IMG/VR virus record: IMGVR_UViG_3300031857_000010
Coordinates: 124,001-188,000 of that record
Length of the DNA: 64,000 nt
Reading direction: 5' to 3' (one strand)
Made by a program: the position numbers and the translations under genes. The notes beneath the pieces were generated by a model. It ran no database searches. It saw only the letters and a program-made list of their open reading frames with translations, and was not told where the DNA came from. Positions 16,685 through 62,053 of the stretch are shown piece after piece (position 1 is the first letter of the stretch; the number at the start of each line of letters is the position of its first letter).

Positions 16685-18796
16685 TTAAAAATCGATATCC
16701 AGTTGCAAAGTAAGCCATCTAATGTTACTTTTCAGTATGGGATAGGTAGGTTTTCCGGCTGCTACAACGTTGCCTAATTCGTCTAAAACCGCTATTTCTG
16801 TTATGTAGGTTGCAGTGTCGATTTCTGGGTCAAAAGTTGGATTGTTTGAGCCATTCAGTTCAGAATCATCTAAATATGCTTGAATCCTTGTTTTATAAAC
16901 GACTGCAGCAATTCCAGTTTTGATTGTTCCGTAAACAAAACATTCATCACCAAAATTTAAATAACTCTGATTTGCTGTCAATCCTGAATTTATTGTATAT
17001 GTAGACCCTGTATTAAAATCTTCTTCAGAAATAACAAATTCATATGAATTAAAAACTTTTGGATCGATTGTGTTTAATCCATAATCTGATGCCCTATAAA
17101 CTCCGTTCCCACCAACTGAGGAATCAGATACTCTTTTCCAATCTTGGTAAGGGACATTTCCAATATCATAATTTTTATAACTTAACTGTTTGTTTACCAA
17201 AAGTTGAACAGTGTTTGCATTCCAACCAGTACCATTATATAAGATATTAAGTAATTCTGAGTCATCTCTCATATATGGAAATGAATTTGAATTTGGAAAT
17301 CTAACTTTTAAATATTGTTTGTTTCCATTAGAATCTGTAAAGCCTGTTATTTTTTTTATATATCCACATGGAAGTGCAGGAGCATGTCCCATACTGACTG
17401 AGCTACTATATGTGCTATTTTCAGCTATATAAGTTACAAAATAATCATAACCATTTTCAACCAAACCATTCGCTGTATATCCAGACATTGTTGTTGCAGA
17501 ATAACCATTAGCAGGATATAAACCTATTTGTGGAGTTCTACTTAAACTAACTTCAAAATCAGGCAAAGTGTAGTTCCTGTTAGATTTATAAGTAAGGGCA
17601 GTTAAAAGTTCTTGATCAGTGACCACAATCAATTGTAATTTGTGATATACTCTACCGACAGAAAATGAATTAATACTTCTTCCATCTCTTAATTCTCTAT
17701 AAGTAGATTTTACAACTGGATCATAATAAGTATCACCTGCGAAATCAGATAAATATAAACCCCAAGTTTCTCCTGACGAATTAAAAGATGTAAAACTTGA
17801 ACTTAAAATATTGTTATAATAAGCATTCAAATTATGATGCCACATGATCCCGGGCAAATTCATTTCAAATGTTTTCTCTACGAATTGTTCTCCGTAGGTA
17901 TTTCCAGTCCATTTGTTTGTATAGTGAATCACTCCAAAAATTGGTAAATTATCACTGAAGCCAAAATACTTTTTTGTACCATTGTATTCTATGGAACCAT
18001 AAGTTGTATAGCCAGAAACTTTATTAGGAACACTAAGTTGAGTTCCCATAACAGTTTTTGTTCTGACTATATTCATATTCCAAACACCCGGATCAGATGT
18101 TTTACCAGAACCATAAAAAGATTCAATCATGTTGTCTCTGAAAAATTGACAAGTTAAAGTGGGAAAAGCACCCGTTGCAAAATTGGGAATTGGTCTATCT
18201 ACTAAATATACTGAACCTGCCGTAACTGCTGAAATTATTTTGTAAAAAGAAAGAACACAAGGATCATTTTGTGGCATTGTTGTGGGATTATAAGAACCTG
18301 ATGAATAATCAGGAGAAACCCAAGGTATTGTAACAACATCATTGACAACAGGCGAATAGCCACCACCAGCAAACGTTATTTTGTTTGTTCCCCAGTTTGA
18401 AGAATTGGAACTATAAGCTAAAGTTTTTGTTCCTTTAACAAAATTTGAAATTGTAGTGCTAGAACTTGATCCAGTTATGGTTATTTTTTCAGTCCCGACA
18501 TTAAAATTGGTAGTTGCATTGTAAATTAAACCATCACCTTGAGGTTGGAAAACAGTGCTTGTTGGAGGAATATTGCCAAAATTTTCACCCGGAACATCTG
18601 GATAGAATTCAGATAAATCCAATACTCTATTATTGAAAATATTGTAATTTCCATCCCTATCAATCGAATAATCGATTTCTCTATCACTCAAAATTATTTT
18701 GCTAAAGGTAATTTTACCTTGTGAAGCAGCCCTTCTACCATGATCGGTAAATTTAATATTGAAAAAAGTAAATGGTTCGGGTTGTATAAACGGCAT
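16685..18796 (-). CDS. tail/baseplate-associated structural protein
   Basis: 703 aa, S/T/G/N-rich; N-terminal TDHGRRAASQG and C-terminal ITEIAVLDELGNVVAAGK resemble baseplate/tail-fibre attachment modules; upstream TATTTAT. Confidence 0.6.
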   Translation of the reverse strand: MPFIQPEPFTFFNIKFTDHGRRAASQGKITFSKIILSDREIDYSIDRDGNYNIFNNRVLDLSEFYPDVPGENFGNIPPTSTVFQPQGDGLIYNATTNFNVGTEKITITGSSSSTTISNFVKGTKTLAYSSNSSNWGTNKITFAGGGYSPVVNDVVTIPWVSPDYSSGSYNPTTMPQNDPCVLSFYKIISAVTAGSVYLVDRPIPNFATGAFPTLTCQFFRDNMIESFYGSGKTSDPGVWNMNIVRTKTVMGTQLSVPNKVSGYTTYGSIEYNGTKKYFGFSDNLPIFGVIHYTNKWTGNTYGEQFVEKTFEMNLPGIMWHHNLNAYYNNILSSSFTSFNSSGETWGLYLSDFAGDTYYDPVVKSTYRELRDGRSINSFSVGRVYHKLQLIVVTDQELLTALTYKSNRNYTLPDFEVSLSRTPQIGLYPANGYSATTMSGYTANGLVENGYDYFVTYIAENSTYSSSVSMGHAPALPCGYIKKITGFTDSNGNKQYLKVRFPNSNSFPYMRDDSELLNILYNGTGWNANTVQLLVNKQLSYKNYDIGNVPYQDWKRVSDSSVGGNGVYRASDYGLNTIDPKVFNSYEFVISEEDFNTGSTYTINSGLTANQSYLNFGDECFVYGTIKTGIAAVVYKTRIQAYLDDSELNGSNNPTFDPEIDTATYITEIAVLDELGNVVAAGKPTYPILKSNIRWLTLQLDIDF

Positions 18797-18855
18797 TATA
18801 TTTATTTATTCTTCTAAATCATAAATATATGACGTTTATTTTTTTTATGAATAAT

Positions 18856-19608
18856 TCAATCCCACCAAGCCTCAATTTTTTGGGTTAATATCAAAAATAG
18901 TATTTTTATTGCTTTTTGATGTCTCATGGTGGACATCACAACGCAAATTGAACTTCTACTTTCTTCATTTTCTGCATAATCAGAAACATCGCAATTTCTG
19001 TATTTTTTTAAATAATTAATCGCTTTATCTCTGTCTAATGGATATTTATTTATAAAATCTACTCTATTATCAGTGATGTACTCTGTTTCCATTCTGTAAA
19101 GTTTTTTACTTTCAGAATTTGAAATTATTTCATGATAATCAGATTCATTTTCTTCAGTGATTTCTACGAAATCGTGTTTGGAATCTTGGTATTCAAAATA
19201 TTCTACCTCATAATGACTCTTTTGTATTCTCTCGATTAAATTTAAACAAACTGTCATCCAATGATTGTCCTGTGGAATATTTGTGTGTCTATTATTTCTA
19301 ACTAGATAATTCCTCTGTTGTAGAATTTTTTGTTTTAAAATTTCAAAAATAAAATAATCATCATAATCTCTGTCTTTCCAAATTATTGGTATCCATACAT
19401 ATAATTTCTTAAAAAAACTGAAAAAGTTTATAAGCCAATTTTTTAAGTTAAAGTATGGATCAAAAAAATATTTCTCTAACCATTGGGGATATTCTTTTTC
19501 TTTATCTTTTAAATGATATAGCCATCTAATTGGATCATAATGTTTTTTATCCCATGCATTTTTTTCTGGCATTGGATATTTTTTAAATTCTTTTATCTCA
19601 GACCACAT
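18856..19608 (-). CDS. phage hypothetical protein
   Basis: 250 aa with WIPIIWKDRDYD...IFEIL..K...AWWD pattern. Confidence 0.6.
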   Translation of the reverse strand: MWSEIKEFKKYPMPEKNAWDKKHYDPIRWLYHLKDKEKEYPQWLEKYFFDPYFNLKNWLINFFSFFKKLYVWIPIIWKDRDYDDYFIFEILKQKILQQRNYLVRNNRHTNIPQDNHWMTVCLNLIERIQKSHYEVEYFEYQDSKHDFVEITEENESDYHEIISNSESKKLYRMETEYITDNRVDFINKYPLDRDKAINYLKKYRNCDVSDYAENEESRSSICVVMSTMRHQKAIKILFLILTQKIEAWWD

Positions 19609-19610
19609 AA

Positions 19611-19973
19611 CTAAATTCCTTTATTACGTAATAATAATTTTTTTATTAATTCATCTTGCTCCTCTTGATCTATTTCGTCTTGGGATTTGACAAGATTATT
19701 TGCAATTTTGTTTTTATCACTATTTTCTTTCATGAATACTGATATTTTTTGATCGGAAATAATATCCCTAAAGTCTTTGACTTTTAAAATGGGACCTTCA
19801 TTCATCTCATCATATTCACTACCATCAGTTGCAACAATTATATCGACATCAAGATTGATGTGATTTTTCAAATCAACAACAACTCTTTTTTTAATGTGAT
19901 CTACTCTAGAAATGATTACTTCACCATCTTTTTTTTTCAAAAAGAAGAAATCATCAGGTTCTAATTTTGACAT
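19611..19973 (-). CDS. hypothetical protein
   Basis: 120 aa ORF. Confidence 0.55.
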   Translation of the reverse strand: MSKLEPDDFFFLKKKDGEVIISRVDHIKKRVVVDLKNHINLDVDIIVATDGSEYDEMNEGPILKVKDFRDIISDQKISVFMKENSDKNKIANNLVKSQDEIDQEEQDELIKKLLLRNKGI

Positions 19974-19995
19974 ATTCTTATTTTTTATTTTAAAT

Positions 19996-20220
19996 AAACC
20001 GAACTCACAGCACTAATCTTAAGTTCAGAAGGTCATCTAGATATTCCACATTAGTATATTACAATTGGTAGAAATTTTACGACATTGTAGTTTCGTGTTT
20101 TATGCTCGGACTTATACACGTTATCAACCATTAAAGAAGCAGGTCTATCGTAAACTCTTACTCAAAGGATGGACTTCTCCGGAGCCTAATCCCCAGTGGG
20201 TTTAACCATGAGCCGGTTTT
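19996..20220 (-). ncRNA. structured ~225 nt ncRNA, 6S-RNA-like candidate
   Basis: ORF-free, GC-richer island; ends pair (AACCGGCUCAUGG / CUGUGAGUUCGGUU, G-U pairs only on the minus strand); internal helices AGAAG/CUUCU, CAUC/GAUG, UUUACGAUA/UGUCGUAAA, UUCUAC/GUGGAA; promoter directly upstream. Confidence 0.65.
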
Positions 20221-20225
20221 GAATA

Positions 20226-20255
20226 CAAAAATAACTTAAATAATTTAAAATCAAA
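20226..20255 (-). promoter_or_regulatory. Bacteroidota sigma-A-type promoter for the ncRNA
   Basis: TTTG (20252-20255) - 18 nt - TATTTTTG (20226-20233, matches TAnnTTTG), ending 5 nt before the terminal stem. Confidence 0.65.
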
Positions 20256-22716
20256 ATTTATACCTTAAGTTAACTGAAAAATCTTGACCCAACCTATAGT
20301 AGTTTGAAACAACATAACCAGAATCAGAATTTTGAATAAATTCATATTTTGCATTTAATAAATTATTGATTCTCAATGAAATAGAGTACTTATTTTTTTC
20401 AATATTATAGATTAAATTTAAAAAGTTTTGTGGTATTTGATAAATATCACCGAGTCCAAAAACACCTACTGCGTTAAGTTTTTTACCTATGAAATTATAA
20501 GTTATTCCAATGTTGTTGTTTTCATTAATTGAATAAAATAAATCAGCATTAGATAGTATTGGCGAAGATCCTTGCAATGGTCTTTTTAAATTACTTACAA
20601 CAACTGTAGAATTACCTTCATTAGAAATAATTATTTGAGACCATAAGACGGATAAATTATAGTCTATTATAAACTTATTAATTCTCTTTTTTATTTCAAT
20701 TTCTCCACCAAAAACATTTGATCTTTCACTATTTTGAAAAGTTTCCAATCTACCACTTGCGGTAGCGATATTAACTCTTTCTATTGGATTATCTATTGTT
20801 TTACTAAATAAAGCTATTGAATAAATTTGGTTATTAGATGGATAAAACTCATAACCTAAATCAAAATTAATGACTTTAGAAACTGTAAGATTTGGATTGC
20901 CTTGAATTTTAGAACCTGCAAAAACTTCAGTATATATAAAAGGAACAGTTTCTCTAAATCTTGGTCTTATATTAGTGATTGAAGCGACAAACTTTAATTG
21001 TTTTTTGTCATTTATTCTATATTTTATTGATAAGAATGGAAGTAAATCTAAATTATCTATTTTATTATTTTTCAAAAATACTGGTGAAAGTTGATCTCTG
21101 TAATTTACTACTTGTTCTACATCTTCAACTCTTAATCCATAACTTAAATCAGTTTTATTACTGTTAAAATTAGATTTAATAAAAAAACCATTAATATTTG
21201 TGTATCCTTCTGTTTTTGAAGCTGGATTATTAACCCATAATTCTGTAGTTTGATCACTATTAAGATATTGATTTGGATTGGAAGGATCAATGTATCCATA
21301 AATTGAATTTATTTTTCCTAAATCATAATATTTTTGTTTATAATCAAATAAATTTCTAGAACTTAAATAACTGTATCCAAAATAGTGATCTAATTTTTTT
21401 CCTTTATGAGAAATTGTAAAATTAAAATTTATCGTGTTTTCTCTGTTTGTGTTCCAGAAAATGTGATTGTCGAGTTTATCTATGTTATTAAATGAATATT
21501 GACCATCATATAGGTAAACAAACTGTTCTCTTGCACTTTCTCCACTTTCCACTAAAGAAAATCCTCCTATACCATCTATTGTCCAATTTCCTAATCTATA
21601 ATTTGCATTTATTTGATCGGTAAATAAAGAATGTGAAAATGGTGTGTTTCTGGTTGTAAAAATATCTTTACTATAATCAAAATGAGTTCCAAATGTTTCT
21701 CTGTAAAGTGTGTTTTTTTGATTTATATATAATGAGGTATTTTTTATACTAAAATTTTTTGATTCATGGTGTAAAACAAAAATACCAGAGGGAGTAAATT
21801 GGTTTATCCTGTCTTTAAATTTATAGTCGAGAACATAATTTCCTTGTTTATTTATTAATCTTAGTATTCCATCTAAATTTTGATTATCATTTATTAAGTT
21901 TAAATTGAGATAGTAGCTTAATTTTTTGTTTTCTTTTCCTATCTGAAAATTAAAATTGTAATTAGGGGTGGGTGTCAATGAGTTTAAAGAACCCCTTAAA
22001 GAAACACTTTTTATTGTTTTTATTTCACTAGTTAAAATATCAATTTGAGCACCACAAACATTTCCCCATTGATCTGAAGAATATGTTTTCCTAATCTTCA
22101 TATTATCCATAATTCCAACAGGTAAAATATTTAAATCAATATTCTTTTTATCTGCATTGTTGGATGGAATTGGAATTCCATTAAGGGTTACTTGATTATA
22201 TCTATCGTCAAGACCCCTAATATTTAATTTAGAATTTGTAAATGATATGCCCGACACCTTTTTTAACCCATCTTCTGCATTTGAAATCCCTTTTCTGGTC
22301 ATTTCTGAAGATCCTATTGAAGACTCAATGCCATTAGCATTTTTTTTATCCATTAAAAGTATAGTTTCTGAAGAATTATTCTTTTTAGCTGATATCTCAA
22401 CTTCATTCATAGAAACAGATTTCGATTTTAATATAATATTAAATTGATTGTTGTTTGCATTTATTTTCTGTTCTTCAAACCCAAGACAATAAAAAACAAT
22501 CAAAGATTCATTTGATTTTATTTTCAAATAAAAATTACCATCGAAATCTGTTTGAGTTCCGTTTTGAGTATTTTCTTCAATTATAGAAACAAAAGGTAGT
22601 GGTTGATTTGATTCATCCACTACCTTTCCTTTTATTTCTTGACTAAATGCTTGAGTAAAACTTACAAATAAGTAAATTAATATGATTATTGCTCTCATTC
22701 TATTTCGTCCAACCAT
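20251..22716 (-). CDS. TonB-dependent outer membrane receptor (likely start 22698)
   Basis: Signal peptide, carboxypeptidase-regulatory-like N-domain (GKVVDES..PLPFVSI..GTQTDFDGNF), plug (IRGLDDRYN...NG), barrel, terminal RYKF. Confidence 0.92.
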   Translation of the reverse strand: MVGRNRMRAIIILIYLFVSFTQAFSQEIKGKVVDESNQPLPFVSIIEENTQNGTQTDFDGNFYLKIKSNESLIVFYCLGFEEQKINANNNQFNIILKSKSVSMNEVEISAKKNNSSETILLMDKKNANGIESSIGSSEMTRKGISNAEDGLKKVSGISFTNSKLNIRGLDDRYNQVTLNGIPIPSNNADKKNIDLNILPVGIMDNMKIRKTYSSDQWGNVCGAQIDILTSEIKTIKSVSLRGSLNSLTPTPNYNFNFQIGKENKKLSYYLNLNLINDNQNLDGILRLINKQGNYVLDYKFKDRINQFTPSGIFVLHHESKNFSIKNTSLYINQKNTLYRETFGTHFDYSKDIFTTRNTPFSHSLFTDQINANYRLGNWTIDGIGGFSLVESGESAREQFVYLYDGQYSFNNIDKLDNHIFWNTNRENTINFNFTISHKGKKLDHYFGYSYLSSRNLFDYKQKYYDLGKINSIYGYIDPSNPNQYLNSDQTTELWVNNPASKTEGYTNINGFFIKSNFNSNKTDLSYGLRVEDVEQVVNYRDQLSPVFLKNNKIDNLDLLPFLSIKYRINDKKQLKFVASITNIRPRFRETVPFIYTEVFAGSKIQGNPNLTVSKVINFDLGYEFYPSNNQIYSIALFSKTIDNPIERVNIATASGRLETFQNSERSNVFGGEIEIKKRINKFIIDYNLSVLWSQIIISNEGNSTVVVSNLKRPLQGSSPILSNADLFYSINENNNIGITYNFIGKKLNAVGVFGLGDIYQIPQNFLNLIYNIEKNKYSISLRINNLLNAKYEFIQNSDSGYVVSNYYRLGQDFSVNLRYKF

Positions 22717-23851
22717 TCATCCAAGCATTACCTGATCCAACATTTGAATCTTGAATGAACCAAGAATCGTTTAAAGTGGCTGTTAAACCAGCAAAAGAAT
22801 TACAATCTTTAAAATCAGTACCATTTCCTGATATGATAGAATTTGCAACAAATAATTCACCAGTTGTAATGTGATTAAGGGTTGTTTGCTCGCTAACTCT
22901 TACTCCATATTTAGCAAAACCAGTAACATTTGCATAAAATATTTTACCCTTTGTTCCTTCTCTTAGTCTAATTCCTTCATTTAATCCATCTCCATCATTA
23001 ACACCATTTAATGTTATATTTGATAATGTTGGTTCTGAATAAGGAGAAGCTGTATTATCATCTCCATTATTATCCGCTTCAATACCTCTATCACCACCAT
23101 CTATACCTTGTTGCACAAACCAATATTGACCTTTTCCTCTCCATCCATGAGTCCAATCAAAAGAATCATCTTGATTCTCCGTTGAAACTGCATATCTTAT
23201 ATTTAATGTTCCTCCAAACAATTCGATTCCATCATCAGAACCCCTATATGCCTGTATGTATTCAACAATTGTACTTGATCCAACCCCATTAAAAGAAAAT
23301 CCATTTAATTCATTATCTGTTCCAAGTATTTTACCAGCATATTCGACTCTTATATATTTTAAAATTCCGGAATTGTCTTGATCGTTACTTCCTCCATAAA
23401 CACCTGTACCCCCTTCGCCTTCTGCAGTTAGACCAGTGTTTATGTCAGCATATCCATTGACAATTATTCCTCCCCAATCACCATAGGTAGGATTGCTTTT
23501 TAATGGTGTGAAAATTATAGGATTAGTACTAGAACCTTCTGCGAAAATTTTTGCACCTTGTTTTATTGATAAAAAGGTTGTTACAGATGGATCAGCGTAT
23601 ATTGTTTGTCCACCATTTATATAAAGTGAATAACCCTCTTCAATAAATACACCACCAGAAAGAAGCCATTTTTTAGACGAATCCAAAGTAAAATTTTCAT
23701 TTATGACACCCTCTATTTTTTGAAATAAATCTCCATTTATATTTACTTCTGTAACTATAAATGATTTATTTTCTGGAATTTGATTATCGTCTTTTTTGCA
23801 AGACGTAACAAGTACAGCGAATGCTGTAATAATAAATAATAGTTTTTTCAT
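22700..23851 (-). CDS. Bacteroidota lipoprotein with beta-helix-like repeats, partner of the TBDR
   Basis: Lipobox VTSC; GDWGGIIVNG, DNSGILKYIRVEYAG, ELNGFSFNGVGS, DDGIELFGGT, DDSFDWT.GW, RGIEADN. Confidence 0.8.
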   Translation of the reverse strand: MKKLLFIITAFAVLVTSCKKDDNQIPENKSFIVTEVNINGDLFQKIEGVINENFTLDSSKKWLLSGGVFIEEGYSLYINGGQTIYADPSVTTFLSIKQGAKIFAEGSSTNPIIFTPLKSNPTYGDWGGIIVNGYADINTGLTAEGEGGTGVYGGSNDQDNSGILKYIRVEYAGKILGTDNELNGFSFNGVGSSTIVEYIQAYRGSDDGIELFGGTLNIRYAVSTENQDDSFDWTHGWRGKGQYWFVQQGIDGGDRGIEADNNGDDNTASPYSEPTLSNITLNGVNDGDGLNEGIRLREGTKGKIFYANVTGFAKYGVRVSEQTTLNHITTGELFVANSIISGNGTDFKDCNSFAGLTATLNDSWFIQDSNVGSGNAWMNGWTK

Positions 23852-29810: not shown

Positions 29811-29892
29811 TGAGCCGATGGAGGGACTCGAACCCCCGGTGTTTGTGTTCCAGTTTACAAAACTGGTGCTGTCGCCACTGAGCCACATCGGC
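29811..29892 (-). tRNA. tRNA-Thr(UGU)
   Basis: GCCGATG/CATCGGC; CCAGT-TTTGTAA-ACTGG. Confidence 0.9.
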
Positions 29893-29900
29893 AATAATAA

Positions 29901-29974
29901 GTTCATCCAGAGGAAGTCGAATTCCCATCTTCTGGTTCGTAGCCAGATATTCTCTCCGTTAAACTACAGGTGAA
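29901..29974 (-). tRNA. tRNA-Arg(ACG)
   Basis: TCTGG-CTACGAA-CCAGA; imperfect acceptor stem. Confidence 0.8.
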
Positions 29975-29979
29975 TTTTT

Positions 29980-30054
29980 GTACCCCCAGTGGAAGTCGAA
30001 TCCACAAACACCAGATCCTAAGTCTAGCCGCTTTGCCAGTTTGCGTACAGGGGC
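29980..30054 (-). tRNA. tRNA-Leu(UAG), short variable region
   Basis: GCCCCTG/TGGGGGT; CTAGA-CTTAGGA-TCTGG. Confidence 0.85.
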
Positions 30055-30060
30055 ATTTTA

Positions 30061-30134
30061 TGGAGGTAGGAGATGGGATCAAACCATCGTAGAAGGTTTT
30101 GCAGACCTCCACCTAGTCACTCGGTCATCCTACC
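30061..30134 (-). tRNA. tRNA-Cys(GCA)
   Basis: GGTAGGA/TCCTACC TCCA; GAGGT-CTGCAAA-ACCTT. Confidence 0.9.
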
Positions 30135-30143
30135 TTACATTAT

Positions 30144-30223
30144 TGTTGGGATGGAGGGGATCGAACCCACATGTCACCAATTACTCTTTCAACACGTTAT
30201 CAGCGTGAGGAGATACAACCCAA
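30144..30223 (-). ncRNA. non-canonical tRNA-like RNA, GAU (Ile) loop, D-loop motif 3' of the anticodon arm
   Basis: CACG-CTGATAA-CGTG, GAAAGAGTAATTGGTGACAT, T-arm GTGGG-TTCGATC-CCCTC; same architecture as 29043..29120. Confidence 0.7.
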
Positions 30224-30281
30224 TAAAGAAATATTTTGCGTAAAGTATCAGAAATTAATACTTTCTGCAAAAAATTTATTT

Positions 30282-30356
30282 TGATGTCCCAGCTGGAATC
30301 GAACCAACATCATCAGAGTCAAATTCTGATATAATTAACCGTTATACTATAGGACA
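30282..30356 (-). tRNA. tRNA-Gln(UUG)
   Basis: TGTCCTA/TGGGACA; TCAGA-ATTTGAC-TCTGA. Confidence 0.85.
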
Positions 30357-30368
30357 ATATAATATTAG

Positions 30369-30441
30369 AGTGGGATAGGAAGTAATCGAAACTTCGCACC
30401 TATGATTTACAGTCATTGTGAACTCCCCGGTCTCTATCCCA
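30369..30441 (-). tRNA. atypical tRNA-Tyr(GUA)
   Basis: GGGATAG/CTATCCC; ATGA-CTGTAAA-TCAT; aberrant D region, no long variable arm. Confidence 0.6.
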
Positions 30442-30448
30442 GATATTT

Positions 30449-30524
30449 GTACTCCCGACGGGACTCGAACCCGCAATGACCACCTTGAAAGGGTGGTGAC
30501 TTAAACCAATTTGTCCACAGGAGC
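30449..30524 (-). tRNA. tRNA-Glu(UUC)
   Basis: CCACC-CTTTCAA-GGTGG; canonical T-arm. Confidence 0.92.
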
Positions 30525-30529
30525 ATTAA

Positions 30530-30611
30530 GAGCGAGTAGAGAGAATCGAACTCTCATCTCTGGTTTGGAAGACCAGCATAATTTACTTTCGTTCCACTAT
30601 ACGATACTCGC
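30530..30611 (-). tRNA. tRNA-Gly(UCC), enlarged D-loop
   Basis: GCGAGTA/TACTCGC; CTGGT-CTTCCAA-ACCAG. Confidence 0.85.
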
Positions 30612-30661
30612 AATTGTGCCAACATGTCAAAGAACAACAACAGATACTCATGTTGTTTTAT

Positions 30662-30738
30662 TGTTGCGGGAATGGGAATCGAACCCATGTGATTCAGCTT
30701 ATGAGACTGAGCTGGAACCATCTCCAGTCCATCCCGCA
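30662..30738 (-). tRNA. tRNA-Met(CAU), initiator-like acceptor
   Basis: TGCGGGA/TCCCGCA; TCAGT-CTCATAA-GCTGA. Confidence 0.85.
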
Positions 30739-30745
30739 ATTTTTA

Positions 30746-30820
30746 GGAGGAGCTACCGAGCTTTGAACTCGGGACTTAACATTGCAAATGTTATGTGTTC
30801 GCCATCTATACCATAGCCCC
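30746..30820 (-). tRNA. tRNA-Ala(UGC)
   Basis: GGGGCTA/TAGCTCC with G3-U70; TAACA-TTTGCAA-TGTTA. Confidence 0.9.
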
Positions 30821-30822
30821 AT

Positions 30823-30900
30823 TGTCTGGTAAGCCGGACTCGAACCGACATCAGCTCCTACTTCCAAGGTAGGCGAGGCAACCAATTCCTCCATTACCAG
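30823..30900 (-). tRNA. tRNA-Pro(UGG)
   Basis: CCTAC-CTTGGAA-GTAGG. Confidence 0.88.
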
Positions 30901-30903
30901 TTT

Positions 30904-30978
30904 AGCGGTCTATGAGAGAATCGAACTCTCACCACCCGATAGACAGTCGGGTATCCTTAGCCGTTGGACCAATAGACC
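30904..30978 (-). tRNA. tRNA-Asp(GUC)
   Basis: GGTCTAT/ATAGACC G; CCCGA-CTGTCTA-TCGGG. Confidence 0.92.
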
Positions 30979-30988
30979 TTTTTTACTT

Positions 30989-31065
30989 TGTGTACCCGGA
31001 GAGATTCGAACTCTCGACTCCTGCATTAAAAGTGCAGTACTCTAATCCAGCTGAGTTACGGATAC
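30989..31065 (-). tRNA. tRNA-Lys(UUU)
   Basis: CTGCA-CTTTTAA-TGCAG. Confidence 0.92.
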
Positions 31066-31094
31066 ATTTTGAATGCACCCGTAGGCACATTCAG

Positions 31095-31133
31095 TTATTT
31101 ACGTTTTCGTTTTAATTTATTTTTTGTTTTCAT
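31095..31133 (-). CDS. 12-codon Lys/Arg-rich mini-ORF (MKTKNKLKRKRK) inside the tRNA array
   Basis: Read manually; six AAA codons; lies between two hairpins directly upstream of tRNA-Lys(UUU). Confidence 0.35.
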   Translation of the reverse strand: MKTKNKLKRKRK

Positions 31134-31203
31134 TTCATTTCCAGTTTTCTGGGGACTGAGCCCAGCAGGTATTTGACTCAGCCCCCAACATCATCATTTT
31201 TTT

Positions 31204-31278
31204 TGCGGGGAATGTGGGCAACGATCCCACACCCTTCTGCTTAACAGGCAGTTGCTCTTCCACTTGAGCTTCTTCCCC
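31204..31278 (-). tRNA. tRNA-Asn(GUU)
   Basis: CTGC-CTGTTAA-GCAG; non-standard T-loop ATCGTTG. Confidence 0.85.
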
Positions 31279-31282
31279 CCTT

Positions 31283-31357
31283 TGTGGAACCGGAGGCTTT
31301 CGAGTCCTCGACCTTTGGATTTTCAGTCCAACGCTCTTCCATCTGAGCTACGGTTCC
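31283..31357 (-). tRNA. tRNA-Phe(GAA), first gene of the array
   Basis: GGAACCG/CGGTTCC; TTGGA-CTGAAAA-TCCAA. Confidence 0.9.
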
Positions 31358-31393
31358 AAAACAAAAAACCCCTGAACTTTTTGGGTTCAGGGG
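31358..31393 (-). terminator. intrinsic terminator (attenuator) in front of the tRNA array
   Basis: CCCCTGAAC-CCAAAAA-GTTCAGGGG followed by TTTTTTGTTTT on the minus strand, ending at the tRNA-Phe 5' end. Confidence 0.88.
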
Positions 31394-31422
31394 CTTCCTT
31401 TATTTTTTTGGTTTTGTGTTTT

Positions 31423-31602
31423 TTACATCACCTTATTTTTAAAGTTATTTGTTCCCCTGAACCCGGTTGGTTTCTCGCTTTGTGTATTATACCCAAAATC
31501 AAATGAACGAGAATCCACTACGGGTAGACATATTGACGCAATAGGCGTACTTATGGCTGCCTGCCAGTTATTCTTGTTAATATGATTATGAAGCGTGTTC
31601 AT
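31423..31602 (-). CDS. 59-aa leader peptide of the tRNA operon (contains all 20 amino acids)
   Basis: MNTLHNHINKNNWQAAISTPIASICLPVVDSRSFDFGYNTQSEKPTGFRGTNNFKNKVM; below the ORF-track cutoff; A-rich context before ATG. Confidence 0.75.
   Translation of the reverse strand: MNTLHNHINKNNWQAAISTPIASICLPVVDSRSFDFGYNTQSEKPTGFRGTNNFKNKVM
31454..31464 (-). promoter_or_regulatory. antiterminator strand within the leader ORF
   Basis: GGGTTCAGGGG (codons 47-50) is the perfect 11-nt complement of the terminator 5' arm CCCCTGAACCC (31383-31393). Confidence 0.8.
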
Positions 31603-31672
31603 TTTTGAAGACTTTATAACTTTTTTTATTCTTGTTTATTAAATAGTAAGAAATTTTATTTTTTCTTGAATG

Positions 31673-31703
31673 CAAATTTAGTCATTATTTATTTAAAAAC
31701 AAA
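31673..31703 (-). promoter_or_regulatory. Bacteroidota sigma-A-type promoter of the leader/tRNA operon
   Basis: TTTG (31700-31703) - 19 nt - TAAATTTG (31673-31680) matches TTTG-N19-21-TAnnTTTG. Confidence 0.8.
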
Positions 31704-31760
31704 TTTCTATATTAATAAATTCATAAGTAATTGAAAATCAATTTAAAAAATTATATATAA

Positions 31761-57653: not shown

Positions 57654-57763
57654 TGTAGTCAGGACAGGATTCGAACCTGTATGATATCCGCAGATATCTT
57701 TCACTTGCGTTCACTACCTCATCAGGTTTCCGTGATTAGCGTCTACCATTCCGCCACCTGACC
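57654..57763 (-). ncRNA. tRNA-like RNA A (Leu-type D-arm, no canonical anticodon arm)
   Basis: GGTCAGG-TG-GCGGAATGGTAGACGC ... GATATC-TGCG-GATATC ... ACAGG-TTCGAAT-CCTGT-CCTGACT-ACA. Confidence 0.75.
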
Positions 57764-61950: not shown

Positions 61951-62053
61951 TGTAGTCAGGACAGGATTCGAACCTGTACGCCTTTCATCCTGAATACCGC
62001 GACAATACGCTGAAAGACCTCGGATAGTGCGTCTACCATTCCGCCACCTGACT
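61951..62053 (-). ncRNA. tRNA-like RNA B (same ends as A, unrelated centre)
   Basis: AGTCAGG-TG-GCGGAATGGTAGACGC ... CTTTCA/TGAAAG helix ... ACAGG-TTCGAAT-CCTGT-CCTGACT-ACA. Confidence 0.75.

What the first reader, a model, noticed from the sequence alone, without database searches (positions are those of the whole stretch)
19996..20255. Unannotated ~225 nt structured RNA with its own host-type promoter: possible phage 6S RNA
Seen: an ORF-free GC-richer island whose two ends pair over about 13 bp, with G-U pairs that work only on the minus strand. Further long-range helices (AGAAG/CUUCU, CAUC/GAUG, UUUACGAUA/UGUCGUAAA) give a rod with an unpaired middle and a 3'-side hairpin (UUCUAC...GUGGAA). 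A TTTG-N18-TATTTTTG promoter ends 5 nt before the stem. Known: 6S RNAs are rods of roughly this size with a central bubble that sequester sigma-70-type holoenzyme. Inference: a phage 6S mimic could titrate host sigma-A polymerase to switch to ECF/late promoters. It lacks tmRNA, RNase P and group I signatures.
Basis: partly seen in the sequence, partly recalled or inferred. Interest (0 to 1): 0.75.

Follow-up and report, generated by a model that had tools for sequence, protein, structure and literature searches.

The report
Novel phage tRNA-island structured RNA
The flagged gap encodes a real, abundant, about 226-nt folded RNA that is conserved in a small group of freshwater giant phages, usually sits among their tRNA genes (twice directly after a GOLLD RNA), matches no known RNA family, and shows no specific sign of being a 6S RNA.

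Summary
Window 19995-20220 (minus strand) is a structured RNA gene, and its two ends pair in a 16-bp stem.

- **Homologs:** Found in 9 further phage lineages, 67-92% identical to the window copy. They give 19 of 49 base pairs with compensatory changes and 98% pairing, against 35-42% in slid controls.
- **Expression:** Three independent freshwater metatranscriptomes hold contigs of this RNA only. None covers the 3.5 kb laid around it.
The two long-range helices and the 3' hairpin fail the covariation test. Covariation supports a different fold: terminal stem, large invariant internal loop, long irregular helix, three-way junction.
- **Family searches:** Rfam gives no hit to 6S, 6S-Flavo, RNase P or tmRNA, even at E<=10.
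- **Context:** In distant relatives the RNA sits inside tRNA arrays on the tRNA strand. It is 6 nt from tRNAs on both sides in one lineage. It lies 18-27 nt after a GOLLD RNA in two lineages.
- **Distribution:** Not found in 151 Bacteroidota genomes.

Best reading: a new family of stable phage "tRNA-island" RNA, matured with the tRNAs and acting in trans through its invariant loop. A 6S-like role is not excluded but has no specific support (about 10%).

The parts
19995..20220 (-). The whole RNA (226 nt), from AAAACCGG... to ...CGGUUUA
   Evidence: Conservation edges are sharp in alignments A2, A3 and A5. The covariance model R1 matches its full length at 246.9 bits. Metatranscriptome contigs cover 20037-20207 only.
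20226..20255 (-). Bacteroidota-type promoter-like site, TTTG-N18-TATTTTTG, ending 5 nt before the RNA
   Evidence: Exact match, but not conserved in homologs. A second copy at 31703-31673 (-) precedes the tRNA array.
20205..20220 (-). P1, 5' strand of the terminal stem
   Evidence: Pairs with 19996-20011. 7 of its 12 pairs show compensatory changes across homologs (helices 1-2).
19996..20011 (-). P1, 3' strand of the terminal stem
20188..20204 (-). 5' strand of the large internal loop (UAAA-CCCACUGGGG-AUU), nearly invariant, with a mini-hairpin CCC/GGG at 20191-20200
   Evidence: Invariant columns in A5 and A8. A 5-nt insertion in L058 lengthens the mini-hairpin by two A-U pairs. Kept in the short variant L073.
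20012..20029 (-). 3' strand of the large internal loop (UCUGAACUUAAGAUUAGU), largely invariant
   Evidence: The CUUCU...AGUGCU frame is kept in L073.
20184..20187 (-). H2, 5' strand (AGGC)
   Evidence: Pairs with 20030-20034 (G-A-CCU). G-C changes to A-U in L062/L063 and again in L073.
20030..20034 (-). H2, 3' strand (GACCU)
20169..20173 (-). H3, 5' strand (UCCAU)
   Evidence: Pairs with 20045-20049 (GUGGA). 100% paired, 2 pairs with compensatory changes.
20045..20049 (-). H3, 3' strand (GUGGA).
20160..20168 (-). H4, 5' strand (CCUUUGAGU)
   Evidence: Pairs with 20062-20069. 3 pairs with compensatory changes (helix 7).
20062..20069 (-). H4, 3' strand (ACCAAUUG)
20148..20153 (-). H5, 5' strand (UUACGA)
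   Evidence: Pairs with 20077-20082 (UCGUAA). 3 pairs with compensatory changes (helix 8).
20077..20082 (-). H5, 3' strand (UCGUAA)
   Evidence: In a metatranscriptome variant, position 20081 changes G-C to G-U.
20126..20145 (-). H6 hairpin (GACC, 12-nt loop, GGUU)
   Evidence: 2 of 4 pairs change on both sides, e.g. GACC/GGUU to GGUC/GACU.
20094..20120 (-). H7 hairpin, within an almost invariant 28-nt block (only L061 differs, by one compensated pair)
   Evidence: The 18-mer TAAGTCCGAGCATAAAAC retrieves only family members from IMG/VR.
20050..20061 (-). Variable bulge between H4 and H3 on the 3' side
   Evidence: Poorly conserved columns. Natural variants in run X17 cluster here.

Best explanation
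**What it is**
Window 19995-20220 (-) is the gene of a previously undescribed family of stable, structured, trans-acting RNA. The family is carried by a small group of large freshwater phages, probably of Bacteroidota.

**Shown**
- The RNA folds into a terminal stem P1, then a large internal loop whose two strands are almost invariant. Next comes a long irregular helix (H2-H5), which ends in a three-way junction with two hairpins (H6, H7).
- It accumulates as a discrete species far above its neighbouring mRNAs.
- Its ancestral-looking position is a slot inside phage tRNA arrays, sometimes just 3' of a GOLLD RNA.

**Inferred**
- In most phages the RNA is co-transcribed with the tRNAs and cut out by the tRNA-maturing nucleases. 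These would be RNase P at the next tRNA's 5' end, and RNase Z or RNase E type cuts after the preceding tRNA. P1 then protects its ends.
- In this phage the gene has moved out of the array and picked up a host-type promoter.
- The working part is P1 + invariant loop + H2/H3, the only part kept in the 133-nt variant L073.
- That core binds a conserved host component rather than a phage protein. Given the company it keeps, the component is most likely part of the tRNA or translation apparatus.
- The target and the effect on it are not known.
For: - **Structure:** 98.3% of cells are paired, against 35-42% in slid controls. 19 pairs have double changes, against 1-5 in the controls. No shuffle of 500 reached the observed score.
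- **Strand:** 60 G-U cells.
- **Conservation above the protein level:** 112 of 236 columns are invariant at 67-92% pairwise identity. The neighbouring 250-aa and 120-aa proteins are only 60-66% identical.
- **Expression:** In X15, X16 and X17, contigs cover 20019-20207 only, with zero depth over the rest of 18500-22000. 15 RNA runs hold its words. For X15, all words held in the 1.2-kb query lie in the RNA.
- **tRNA context, same strand:** L056, L057 and L059 have 6-nt spacers on both sides. L058 has tRNA-Phe 21 nt upstream. L060 and L061 lie inside arrays.
- **GOLLD directly upstream:** L060 and L062/L063.
- **No conserved protein neighbour across lineages**.
- **Core kept in L073**.
- **Not found in 151 Bacteroidota genomes**.
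Against: - No experiment or strand-specific read shows the mature ends. The contigs stop 13-40 nt short of the predicted ends.
- In the window's own phage and its close relatives the RNA is not in the tRNA array. Co-processing with tRNAs is therefore inferred only for the distant lineages.
- The proposed host partner rests on association alone.
- The 120-aa gene downstream is linked to the RNA in five loci, so a phage partner is not excluded in that clade.
Confidence: 0.6

Rival explanations
1. It is a 6S-like RNA. The terminal stem, the two-stranded loop and the long helix mimic an open promoter and sequester host sigma-A RNA polymerase. That would favour polymerase carrying phage sigma factors.
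For: - The topology is stem, large two-sided loop, long helix.
- The size is ~226 nt, and abundance in RNA libraries is high.
- This phage encodes three sigma-70-family proteins. G159, the record of L060, encodes one.
Against: - No 6S or 6S-Flavo match at E<=10.
- The loop strands are invariant, and one holds a hairpin, unlike 6S bubbles.
- P1 is only 16 bp. There is a second 10+10-nt internal loop and a three-way junction.
- L073 lacks H4-H7.
- The niche is tRNA and GOLLD islands.
- The 94%-complete record G001 has the RNA but no Sigma70_r2.
Confidence: 0.1
2. It is a small relative in function, not in sequence, of GOLLD and ROOL: an RNA that self-assembles into an RNA-only complex or works together with GOLLD.
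For: - Same niche and strand, 18-27 nt after GOLLD in two lineages.
- GOLLD and ROOL are phage tRNA-island RNAs that form homo-oligomeric cages (10.1101/2024.12.08.627333).
- Many invariant unpaired bases.
- GGUUAAACC and CAAUUG are (near-)self-complementary. This is read directly from the sequence.
Against: - Most carriers, including this phage, have no GOLLD in the sequence held.
- No similarity to the GOLLD model.
- CAAUUG is already used in the intramolecular helix H4.
- Oligomerisation was not tested.
Confidence: 0.12
3. It is a tRNA-directed RNA. It would bind tRNAs, for example through the invariant UGGU next to P1 pairing with a 3'-ACCA end as in T-boxes and RNase P. Alternatively it would act as a ribozyme or decoy in tRNA processing or in defence against tRNA-cleaving host systems.
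For: - It occupies a tRNA slot in arrays.
- UGGU and AGUGCU are invariant while the rest of P1 covaries freely.
- It abuts a multi-copy tRNA-like gene family.
Against: - No RNase P, T-box or ribozyme model matches.
- No P4-type pseudoknot or CR-I to CR-V arrangement could be placed.
- UGGU is predicted to be paired with GCU.
- Nothing was tested biochemically.
Confidence: 0.12
4. It is a cis-acting leader or processing element of the downstream 120-aa gene's mRNA, not an independent RNA.
For: - The RNA lies 24 nt upstream of the 120-aa ORF here.
- The same pair occurs in L041, L048, L052 and L053.
- No terminator-like site follows it.
Against: - The downstream neighbour is a tRNA, another gene or a GIY-YIG ORF in other lineages.
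- RNA libraries hold the RNA but not the ORF.
- The relative L031 has neither the RNA nor the ORF.
Confidence: 0.03

Closest known systems
GOLLD and ROOL RNAs (large ornate RNAs of phages and prophages)
   Same: - Encoded by phages, on the tRNA strand in or beside tRNA islands.
- Highly structured, with many conserved unpaired bases, and of unknown function.
- In L060 and L062/L063 the new RNA starts 27 and 18 nt after the 3' end of a GOLLD RNA.
   Different: - 226 nt, against about 580 to over 800 nt.
- No match to either Rfam model.
- Much simpler fold: one rod with one three-way junction and no demonstrated pseudoknot.
- Occurs without GOLLD in most carriers.
Phage T4 species 1 and species 2 stable RNAs (rnaC, rnaD)
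   Same: - Small stable RNAs of unknown function placed at the end of a phage tRNA cluster with tRNA-like 1-6-nt spacers.
- A GIY-YIG homing endonuclease gene sits in the cluster.
- L048 has a GIY-YIG ORF abutting the new RNA.
   Different: - No homology: model R1 gives only noise, 8.8 bits.
- rnaC carries a tRNA-like T arm. The new RNA does not.
- Sizes are 139 and 119 nt, against 226 nt.
6S RNA, including the 6S-Flavo motif of Bacteroidota
   Same: - Paired ends, a large internal loop flanked by helices, comparable size, high cellular abundance.
   Different: - No covariance-model match.
- Invariant loop sequence with an internal hairpin.
- Short closing stem, three-way junction at the tip, tRNA-array context.
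- RNA polymerase binding and pRNA synthesis were not tested.

Membership tests
6S RNA (RF00013) / 6S-Flavo (RF01685) | Match to the family covariance model | tested here: not met
   cmscan found no 6S-type hit. It was run at gathering threshold on the window, and at E<=10 on window 19900-20350, on loci L057, L063 and L053, and on L073.
6S RNA (RF00013) / 6S-Flavo (RF01685) | Rod of closing stem, central bubble and long internal stem ending in a loop | tested here: inconclusive
   A closing stem (16 bp), a two-sided loop of about 17-18 nt per strand and a long helix are present. However, the 5' loop strand forms a hairpin, there is a second 10+10-nt loop, and the tip is a three-way junction. 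L073 lacks the distal helix.
6S RNA (RF00013) / 6S-Flavo (RF01685) | Binds the housekeeping sigma holoenzyme and templates pRNA | not testable with these tools
   Needs biochemistry.
Bacterial RNase P RNA (RF00010, RF00011) and type T | Model match, and P4 pseudoknot with conserved regions CR-I to CR-V | tested here: not met
   No hit at E<=10. AAGUCC-like strings exist, but their covariation-supported partners do not give a P4 arrangement.
tmRNA | tRNA-like domain with T arm, plus a tag reading frame | tested here: not met
   ARAGORN finds no tmRNA in the window or in the whole genome. Rfam gives no hit.
GOLLD RNA (RF02032) | Match to the conserved 3' domain model | tested here: not met
   The GOLLD hits end 18-27 nt before the new RNA begins. 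There is no GOLLD in the window or the rest of its genome.
GOLLD / ROOL kind (phage tRNA-island RNAs) | Phage-borne, beside tRNA genes, same strand | tested here: met
   Described for GOLLD and ROOL.
T4 rnaC / rnaD | Sequence or structure homology to the T4 RNAs | tested here: not met
   Model R1 run with filters off on T4 70.9-71.2 kb gives 8.8 bits at best.
tRNA | Cloverleaf recognised by ARAGORN or RF00005 | tested here: not met
   No tRNA call on the element in any locus.

The most novel reading that the evidence does not exclude
It is a new compact class of phage RNA that belongs functionally with GOLLD and ROOL. Its invariant internal loop would dock a host tRNA or ribosome component, or other copies of itself. 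That would make it the smallest and most tractable member of the unexplained 'tRNA-island RNA' toolkit of large phages.
Probability: 0.3. Interest if true: 0.85.

Novelty: categorically new. Interest (0 to 1): 0.7.

Why it matters
**Why it matters**
- Phage tRNA islands are already known to hide large RNAs, GOLLD and ROOL. Their structures are now solved, but their purpose is still unknown.
- The RNA found here shares their niche and sometimes sits right after GOLLD.
- It is only 226 nt long, with a natural 133-nt minimal form, and has 112 invariant positions. It is also abundant in environmental RNA libraries.
- That makes it an easy object for structure probing, cryo-EM and pull-downs. It could therefore open the question of what these island RNAs do.
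- If the 6S idea proved right instead, this would be a phage-encoded polymerase decoy. I found no report of one in a single literature search.

**Caveats**
- Novelty is at the level of RNA family.
- Pieces of it could already sit, unnamed, among the 8,495 IMG/VR candidate structured RNAs of PMC10690425. Those reach at most 151 nt, and I could not check them.

Tried and rejected
- **Single-sequence folding.** The z-score is about 0 on both strands, so it is not informative.
- **First patterns built around GGAGAAGTCC.** The 16-mer, the gapped pattern and the 20-mer in metagenome contigs found only identical copies plus chance hits in coding DNA (L029, L036, L039, L040). The reason became clear later: GGAG is AACG, AAUG or similar in relatives.
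- **The genome-contig scan with the invariant 18-mer.** It gave 9 MAG hits that match only 17-30 nt locally and carry no related structure. I judged these to be chance, since about 17 such hits are expected by my own estimate.
- **L078.** A chance hit in GC-rich coding DNA.
- **Eye-level resemblance to RNase P.** I compared the sequence with RNase P CR-I/CR-IV and P4, recalled from memory. I dropped this because the covariation-supported partners place those segments in other structural contexts and no model matches.
- **Eye-level resemblance to rRNA and Y RNA motifs.** These were the 23S GTPase-centre sequence, the 16S 790 loop (GGAUUAG) and the Ro-binding GUCCGA motif of Y RNAs, again recalled from memory. 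I dropped them for the same reason. In addition, there is no TROVE gene in the phage.
- **Pseudoknot AGCAU (H7 loop) with GUGCU (before P1).** It cannot be tested because both sides are invariant. It cannot be the reason for GUGCU conservation, because L073 keeps GUGCU without H7.
- **A 3-bp helix inside the second internal loop.** The registers are inconsistent across lineages.
- **Hammerhead-like CUGAUGAG...GAAA in the insert of the tRNA-like gene at 57.7 kb.** No Rfam ribozyme hit.
- **Complex prediction of the RNA with the 120-aa protein.** The job was not folded by the tool, so it gives no evidence either way.
- **Supplements of PMC10690425.** Not held.

Full report
**Setting.** The window is bases 124001-188000 of a 216.7-kb IMG/VR virus record (GC 28.6%, estimated 83% complete) from fresh water. 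The finding lies in a 277-nt gap (19974-20250) between two minus-strand genes. Upstream is an 821-aa ORF with CarbopepD_reg_2 and Plug domains, a TonB-dependent-receptor-like protein typical of Bacteroidota. Downstream is a 120-aa ORF with no family match. The gap holds no ORF above 46 aa.

**Check of the observation.**
- The ends of the element do pair. In the minus-strand fold, 20205-20220 pairs with 19996-20011 in both the MFE and the centroid structure.
- The folding energy is no better than that of shuffled sequence (z = 0.05, and 0.11 on the plus strand). The single sequence therefore proves nothing.
- GC is moderately raised: 0.38 for the element, with a 100-nt peak of 0.45, against a genome mean of 0.286 (sd 0.065). 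Dozens of other stretches in the genome reach the same level.
- Rfam gives nothing at gathering thresholds for this region. It also gives nothing relevant at E<=10 on 19900-20350.

**Expression.**
- Fifteen public RNA libraries from fresh and river water hold near-identical 31-mers of the 261-nt element.
- For run X15, the 18 words found in a 1.2-kb query are the same number as found in the element alone. All of them therefore lie in the RNA.
- I laid four runs on 18500-22000. X15 and X16, from different studies, each hold one 170-nt contig, at 20037-20206 and 20038-20207, with no mismatch. X17 holds 20094-20206 plus two variant contigs over 20019-20123.
- Depth is zero over the rest of the 3.5 kb in all three runs. 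DNA carry-over would cover the flanks too, so this is a discrete, abundant RNA.
- Contigs carry no strand. They also stop short of the predicted ends, so the mature ends are not shown.

**Finding relatives.**
- IMG/VR and JGI contigs found with the neighbouring proteins, or with patterns around GGAGAAGTCC, were identical copies or chance hits.
- Homologues of the 250-aa and 120-aa neighbour proteins led to contigs that carry diverged copies of the element: L030, L041, L048-L050, L052 and L053.
- These contigs revealed an invariant 28-nt block. An 18-mer from that block retrieved eight more IMG/VR loci, all true members (L056-L063).
- A second conserved block added a shortened member, L073.
- Two further patterns found no new true member. 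The family is therefore rare: 11 IMG/VR contigs, not counting the window's own record, and some of these are copies of the same phage.
- The same 18-mer in 185,579 prokaryote genomes gave only short local matches without the structure.
- The covariance model found nothing in 151 Bacteroidota genomes.

**Structure.**
- Conservation starts and stops sharply at AAAACCGG... and ...CGGUUU.
- On 11 distinct sequences (67-92% identical to the window copy, 112 of 236 columns invariant), RNAalifold and the model-based alignment agree on 49 pairs in ten helices.
- 98.3% of cells are standard pairs, against 35-42% when partners are slid by 1-3 columns. 19 pairs have changes on both sides, against 1-5 in the slid controls. 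No shuffle of 500 reaches the observed values.
- The fold, with window coordinates, is as follows:
  - P1 (ends, 16 bp, heavy covariation).
  - A large internal loop with nearly invariant strands: 5' UAAA-CCCannGGGG-AUU with a mini-hairpin, and 3' UCUnAACnUnAAGAUAAGU.
  - H2 (AGGC/G-A-CCU).
  - A 10+10-nt internal loop.
  - H3 (UCCAY/RUGGA), H4 and H5.
  - A three-way junction with hairpins H6 and H7.
- 60 paired cells are G-U or U-G, which would be A-C on the other strand.

AGAAG/CUUCU, CAUC/GAUG and the 3' hairpin UUCUAC/GUGGAA are paired in only 62%, 75% and 76% of cells and never show compensation. Their 3' partners are claimed by the covariation-supported H2 and H3.

**Natural variants.** The variants seen in X17 fall in variable linkers or turn G-C into G-U, which agrees with this fold.

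**The short variant.** L073 keeps P1, both loop strands, H2 (with the same G-C to A-U swap as L062) and an H3-like hairpin. It lacks H4-H7. The conserved core is therefore the P1-loop-H2-H3 end.

**Context.**
- Gene neighbours are not conserved beyond close relatives.
- In the window's clade the RNA precedes the 120-aa gene. L048 has a GIY-YIG ORF wedged between them.
- In L030 the RNA sits between unrelated genes. In L031 the receptor-like gene runs straight into the 250-aa homologue, with neither the RNA nor the 120-aa gene.
- In the more distant phages the RNA is a unit of the tRNA array, always on the tRNA strand:
  - In L059 the order is tRNA-Leu 469-553, RNA 560-783, tRNA-like gene 790-905. 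L056 and L057 have the same arrangement.
  - In L058 tRNA-Phe ends 21 nt upstream.
  - L060 and L061 lie inside arrays.
- In L060 and L062/L063 a full GOLLD RNA ends 27 and 18 nt before it.
- GOLLD is absent from this phage and from five other carriers as far as they are sequenced.
- GOLLD and ROOL are known to lie near tRNA islands of phages and to be of unknown function.
- T4 has the same layout on a smaller scale: tRNA-Arg, rnaD and rnaC with 1-6-nt spacers, and the GIY-YIG gene segB in the cluster. The model sees no homology to those RNAs.

**Promoter.**
- TTTG-N18-TATTTTTG is at 20255-20226 (-), ending 5 nt before P1.
- The motif is not enriched in the window (3 found, 4.5 expected). However, a second copy lies upstream of the tRNA array at 31703-31673 (-). 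Two of the three copies therefore precede stable-RNA genes on the right strand.
- Homologues have no room for a promoter. They follow a tRNA, a GOLLD RNA or a stop codon directly.
- I infer that in this phage the RNA is a primary transcript of a host-type promoter. Elsewhere it would be cut from a polycistronic RNA-island transcript.

**What it is not.**
- 6S and 6S-Flavo, RNase P RNA, tmRNA, SRP RNA, known ribozymes and riboswitches give no model match on four different members.
- ARAGORN sees no tmRNA.
- There is no TROVE (Ro) or CCA-adding-enzyme gene in the phage.
- For a 6S role: the stem-loop-helix topology and the phage's three sigma-70-family genes.
- Against a 6S role: the invariant, partly folded loop, the short closing stem, the junction at the tip, the truncated L073, the tRNA-island niche, and a 94%-complete carrier with no sigma gene. 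I put it at about 10%.

**Most likely mechanism.**
- Shown: a conserved fold, a discrete abundant RNA, a tRNA/GOLLD-island niche, and restriction to phages as far as searched.
- Inferred: maturation by the tRNA-processing nucleases, action in trans, and recognition of a conserved host component (most plausibly of the tRNA or translation apparatus) through the invariant P1-proximal loop.
- Rivals are self-assembly or cooperation with GOLLD, a tRNA-directed activity, a 6S-like decoy, and a cis-acting leader.

**Novelty.** Searches of the paper library turned up no description of this RNA. The IMG/VR catalogue of candidate structured RNAs (PMC10690425) holds unnamed models of at most 151 nt, and its supplements are not held. 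Partial overlap therefore cannot be ruled out.

Noticed in passing
L060:7256-7670 (+); L062:658-1053 (-); L063:2117-2188 (-): Full-length GOLLD RNAs (306 and 277 bits) lie directly upstream of the new RNA in two phage lineages. None is present in this window or in the rest of its genome.
   Followed up: yes
window 57656-57763 (-) and 61953-62053 (-). Also G000 204389-204505, L056, L057, L058, L059 (4 copies), L061 and L063.: A multi-copy family of tRNA-like genes, 93-126 nt long. Acceptor, class-II-type D arm and T arm are near-identical, but 42-47 nt or more of unrelated sequence replaces the anticodon arm. Rfam calls them tRNA at 38-42 bits. ARAGORN calls them only in intron mode. No ribozyme model hits the inserts. 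They abut the new RNA in several phages.
   Followed up: partly
window 31673-31703 (-) and 31358-31760: A second TTTG-N19-TAnnTTTG promoter-like site lies upstream of the tRNA array. Between it and the first tRNA is about 300 nt without an ORF or any recognised RNA.
   Followed up: no
window 20251-22716 (-) and 22700-23851 (-): The phage encodes an 821-aa TonB-dependent-receptor-like protein (CarbopepD_reg_2 + Plug). The gene before it is homologous to genes that carry Beta_helix_4 in relatives. The pair is conserved in related phages (L031, L048) and may be a virion or tail module rather than a transporter.
   Followed up: partly
G000 68303-68506 (-), 69269-69475 (-), 200087-200287 (+), all outside the window: Three sigma-70-family genes in the phage genome, two of them adjacent.
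   Followed up: partly
L048:3364-3837 (+): A GIY-YIG-type ORF starts inside the last bases of the RNA gene and separates it from the 119-aa gene. T4 has the GIY-YIG gene segB inside its tRNA / stable-RNA cluster.
   Followed up: partly
L031:519-3708: In a related phage the receptor-like gene is followed after 25 nt by the 250-aa homologue, with neither the RNA nor the 120-aa gene. The RNA + 120-aa pair therefore behaves as a movable module.
   Followed up: partly
L060:4571-4648 (+) and L060:6002-6189 (+): ARAGORN calls a suppressor-type tRNA with anticodon UUA (reads UAA), and Rfam calls a group I intron, both in the RNA island of that phage.
   Followed up: no
window 18856-19608 (-): The 250-aa protein has no Pfam hit itself. 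One distant homologue (P0037, 37% identity over 55% of the query) carries the RNase HII domain PF01351.
   Followed up: no
window 29812-31357 (-): An array of 14-16 tRNA genes lies on the same strand as the RNA, 9.6 kb away. In this phage the new RNA is therefore outside the array, unlike in distant relatives.
   Followed up: yes
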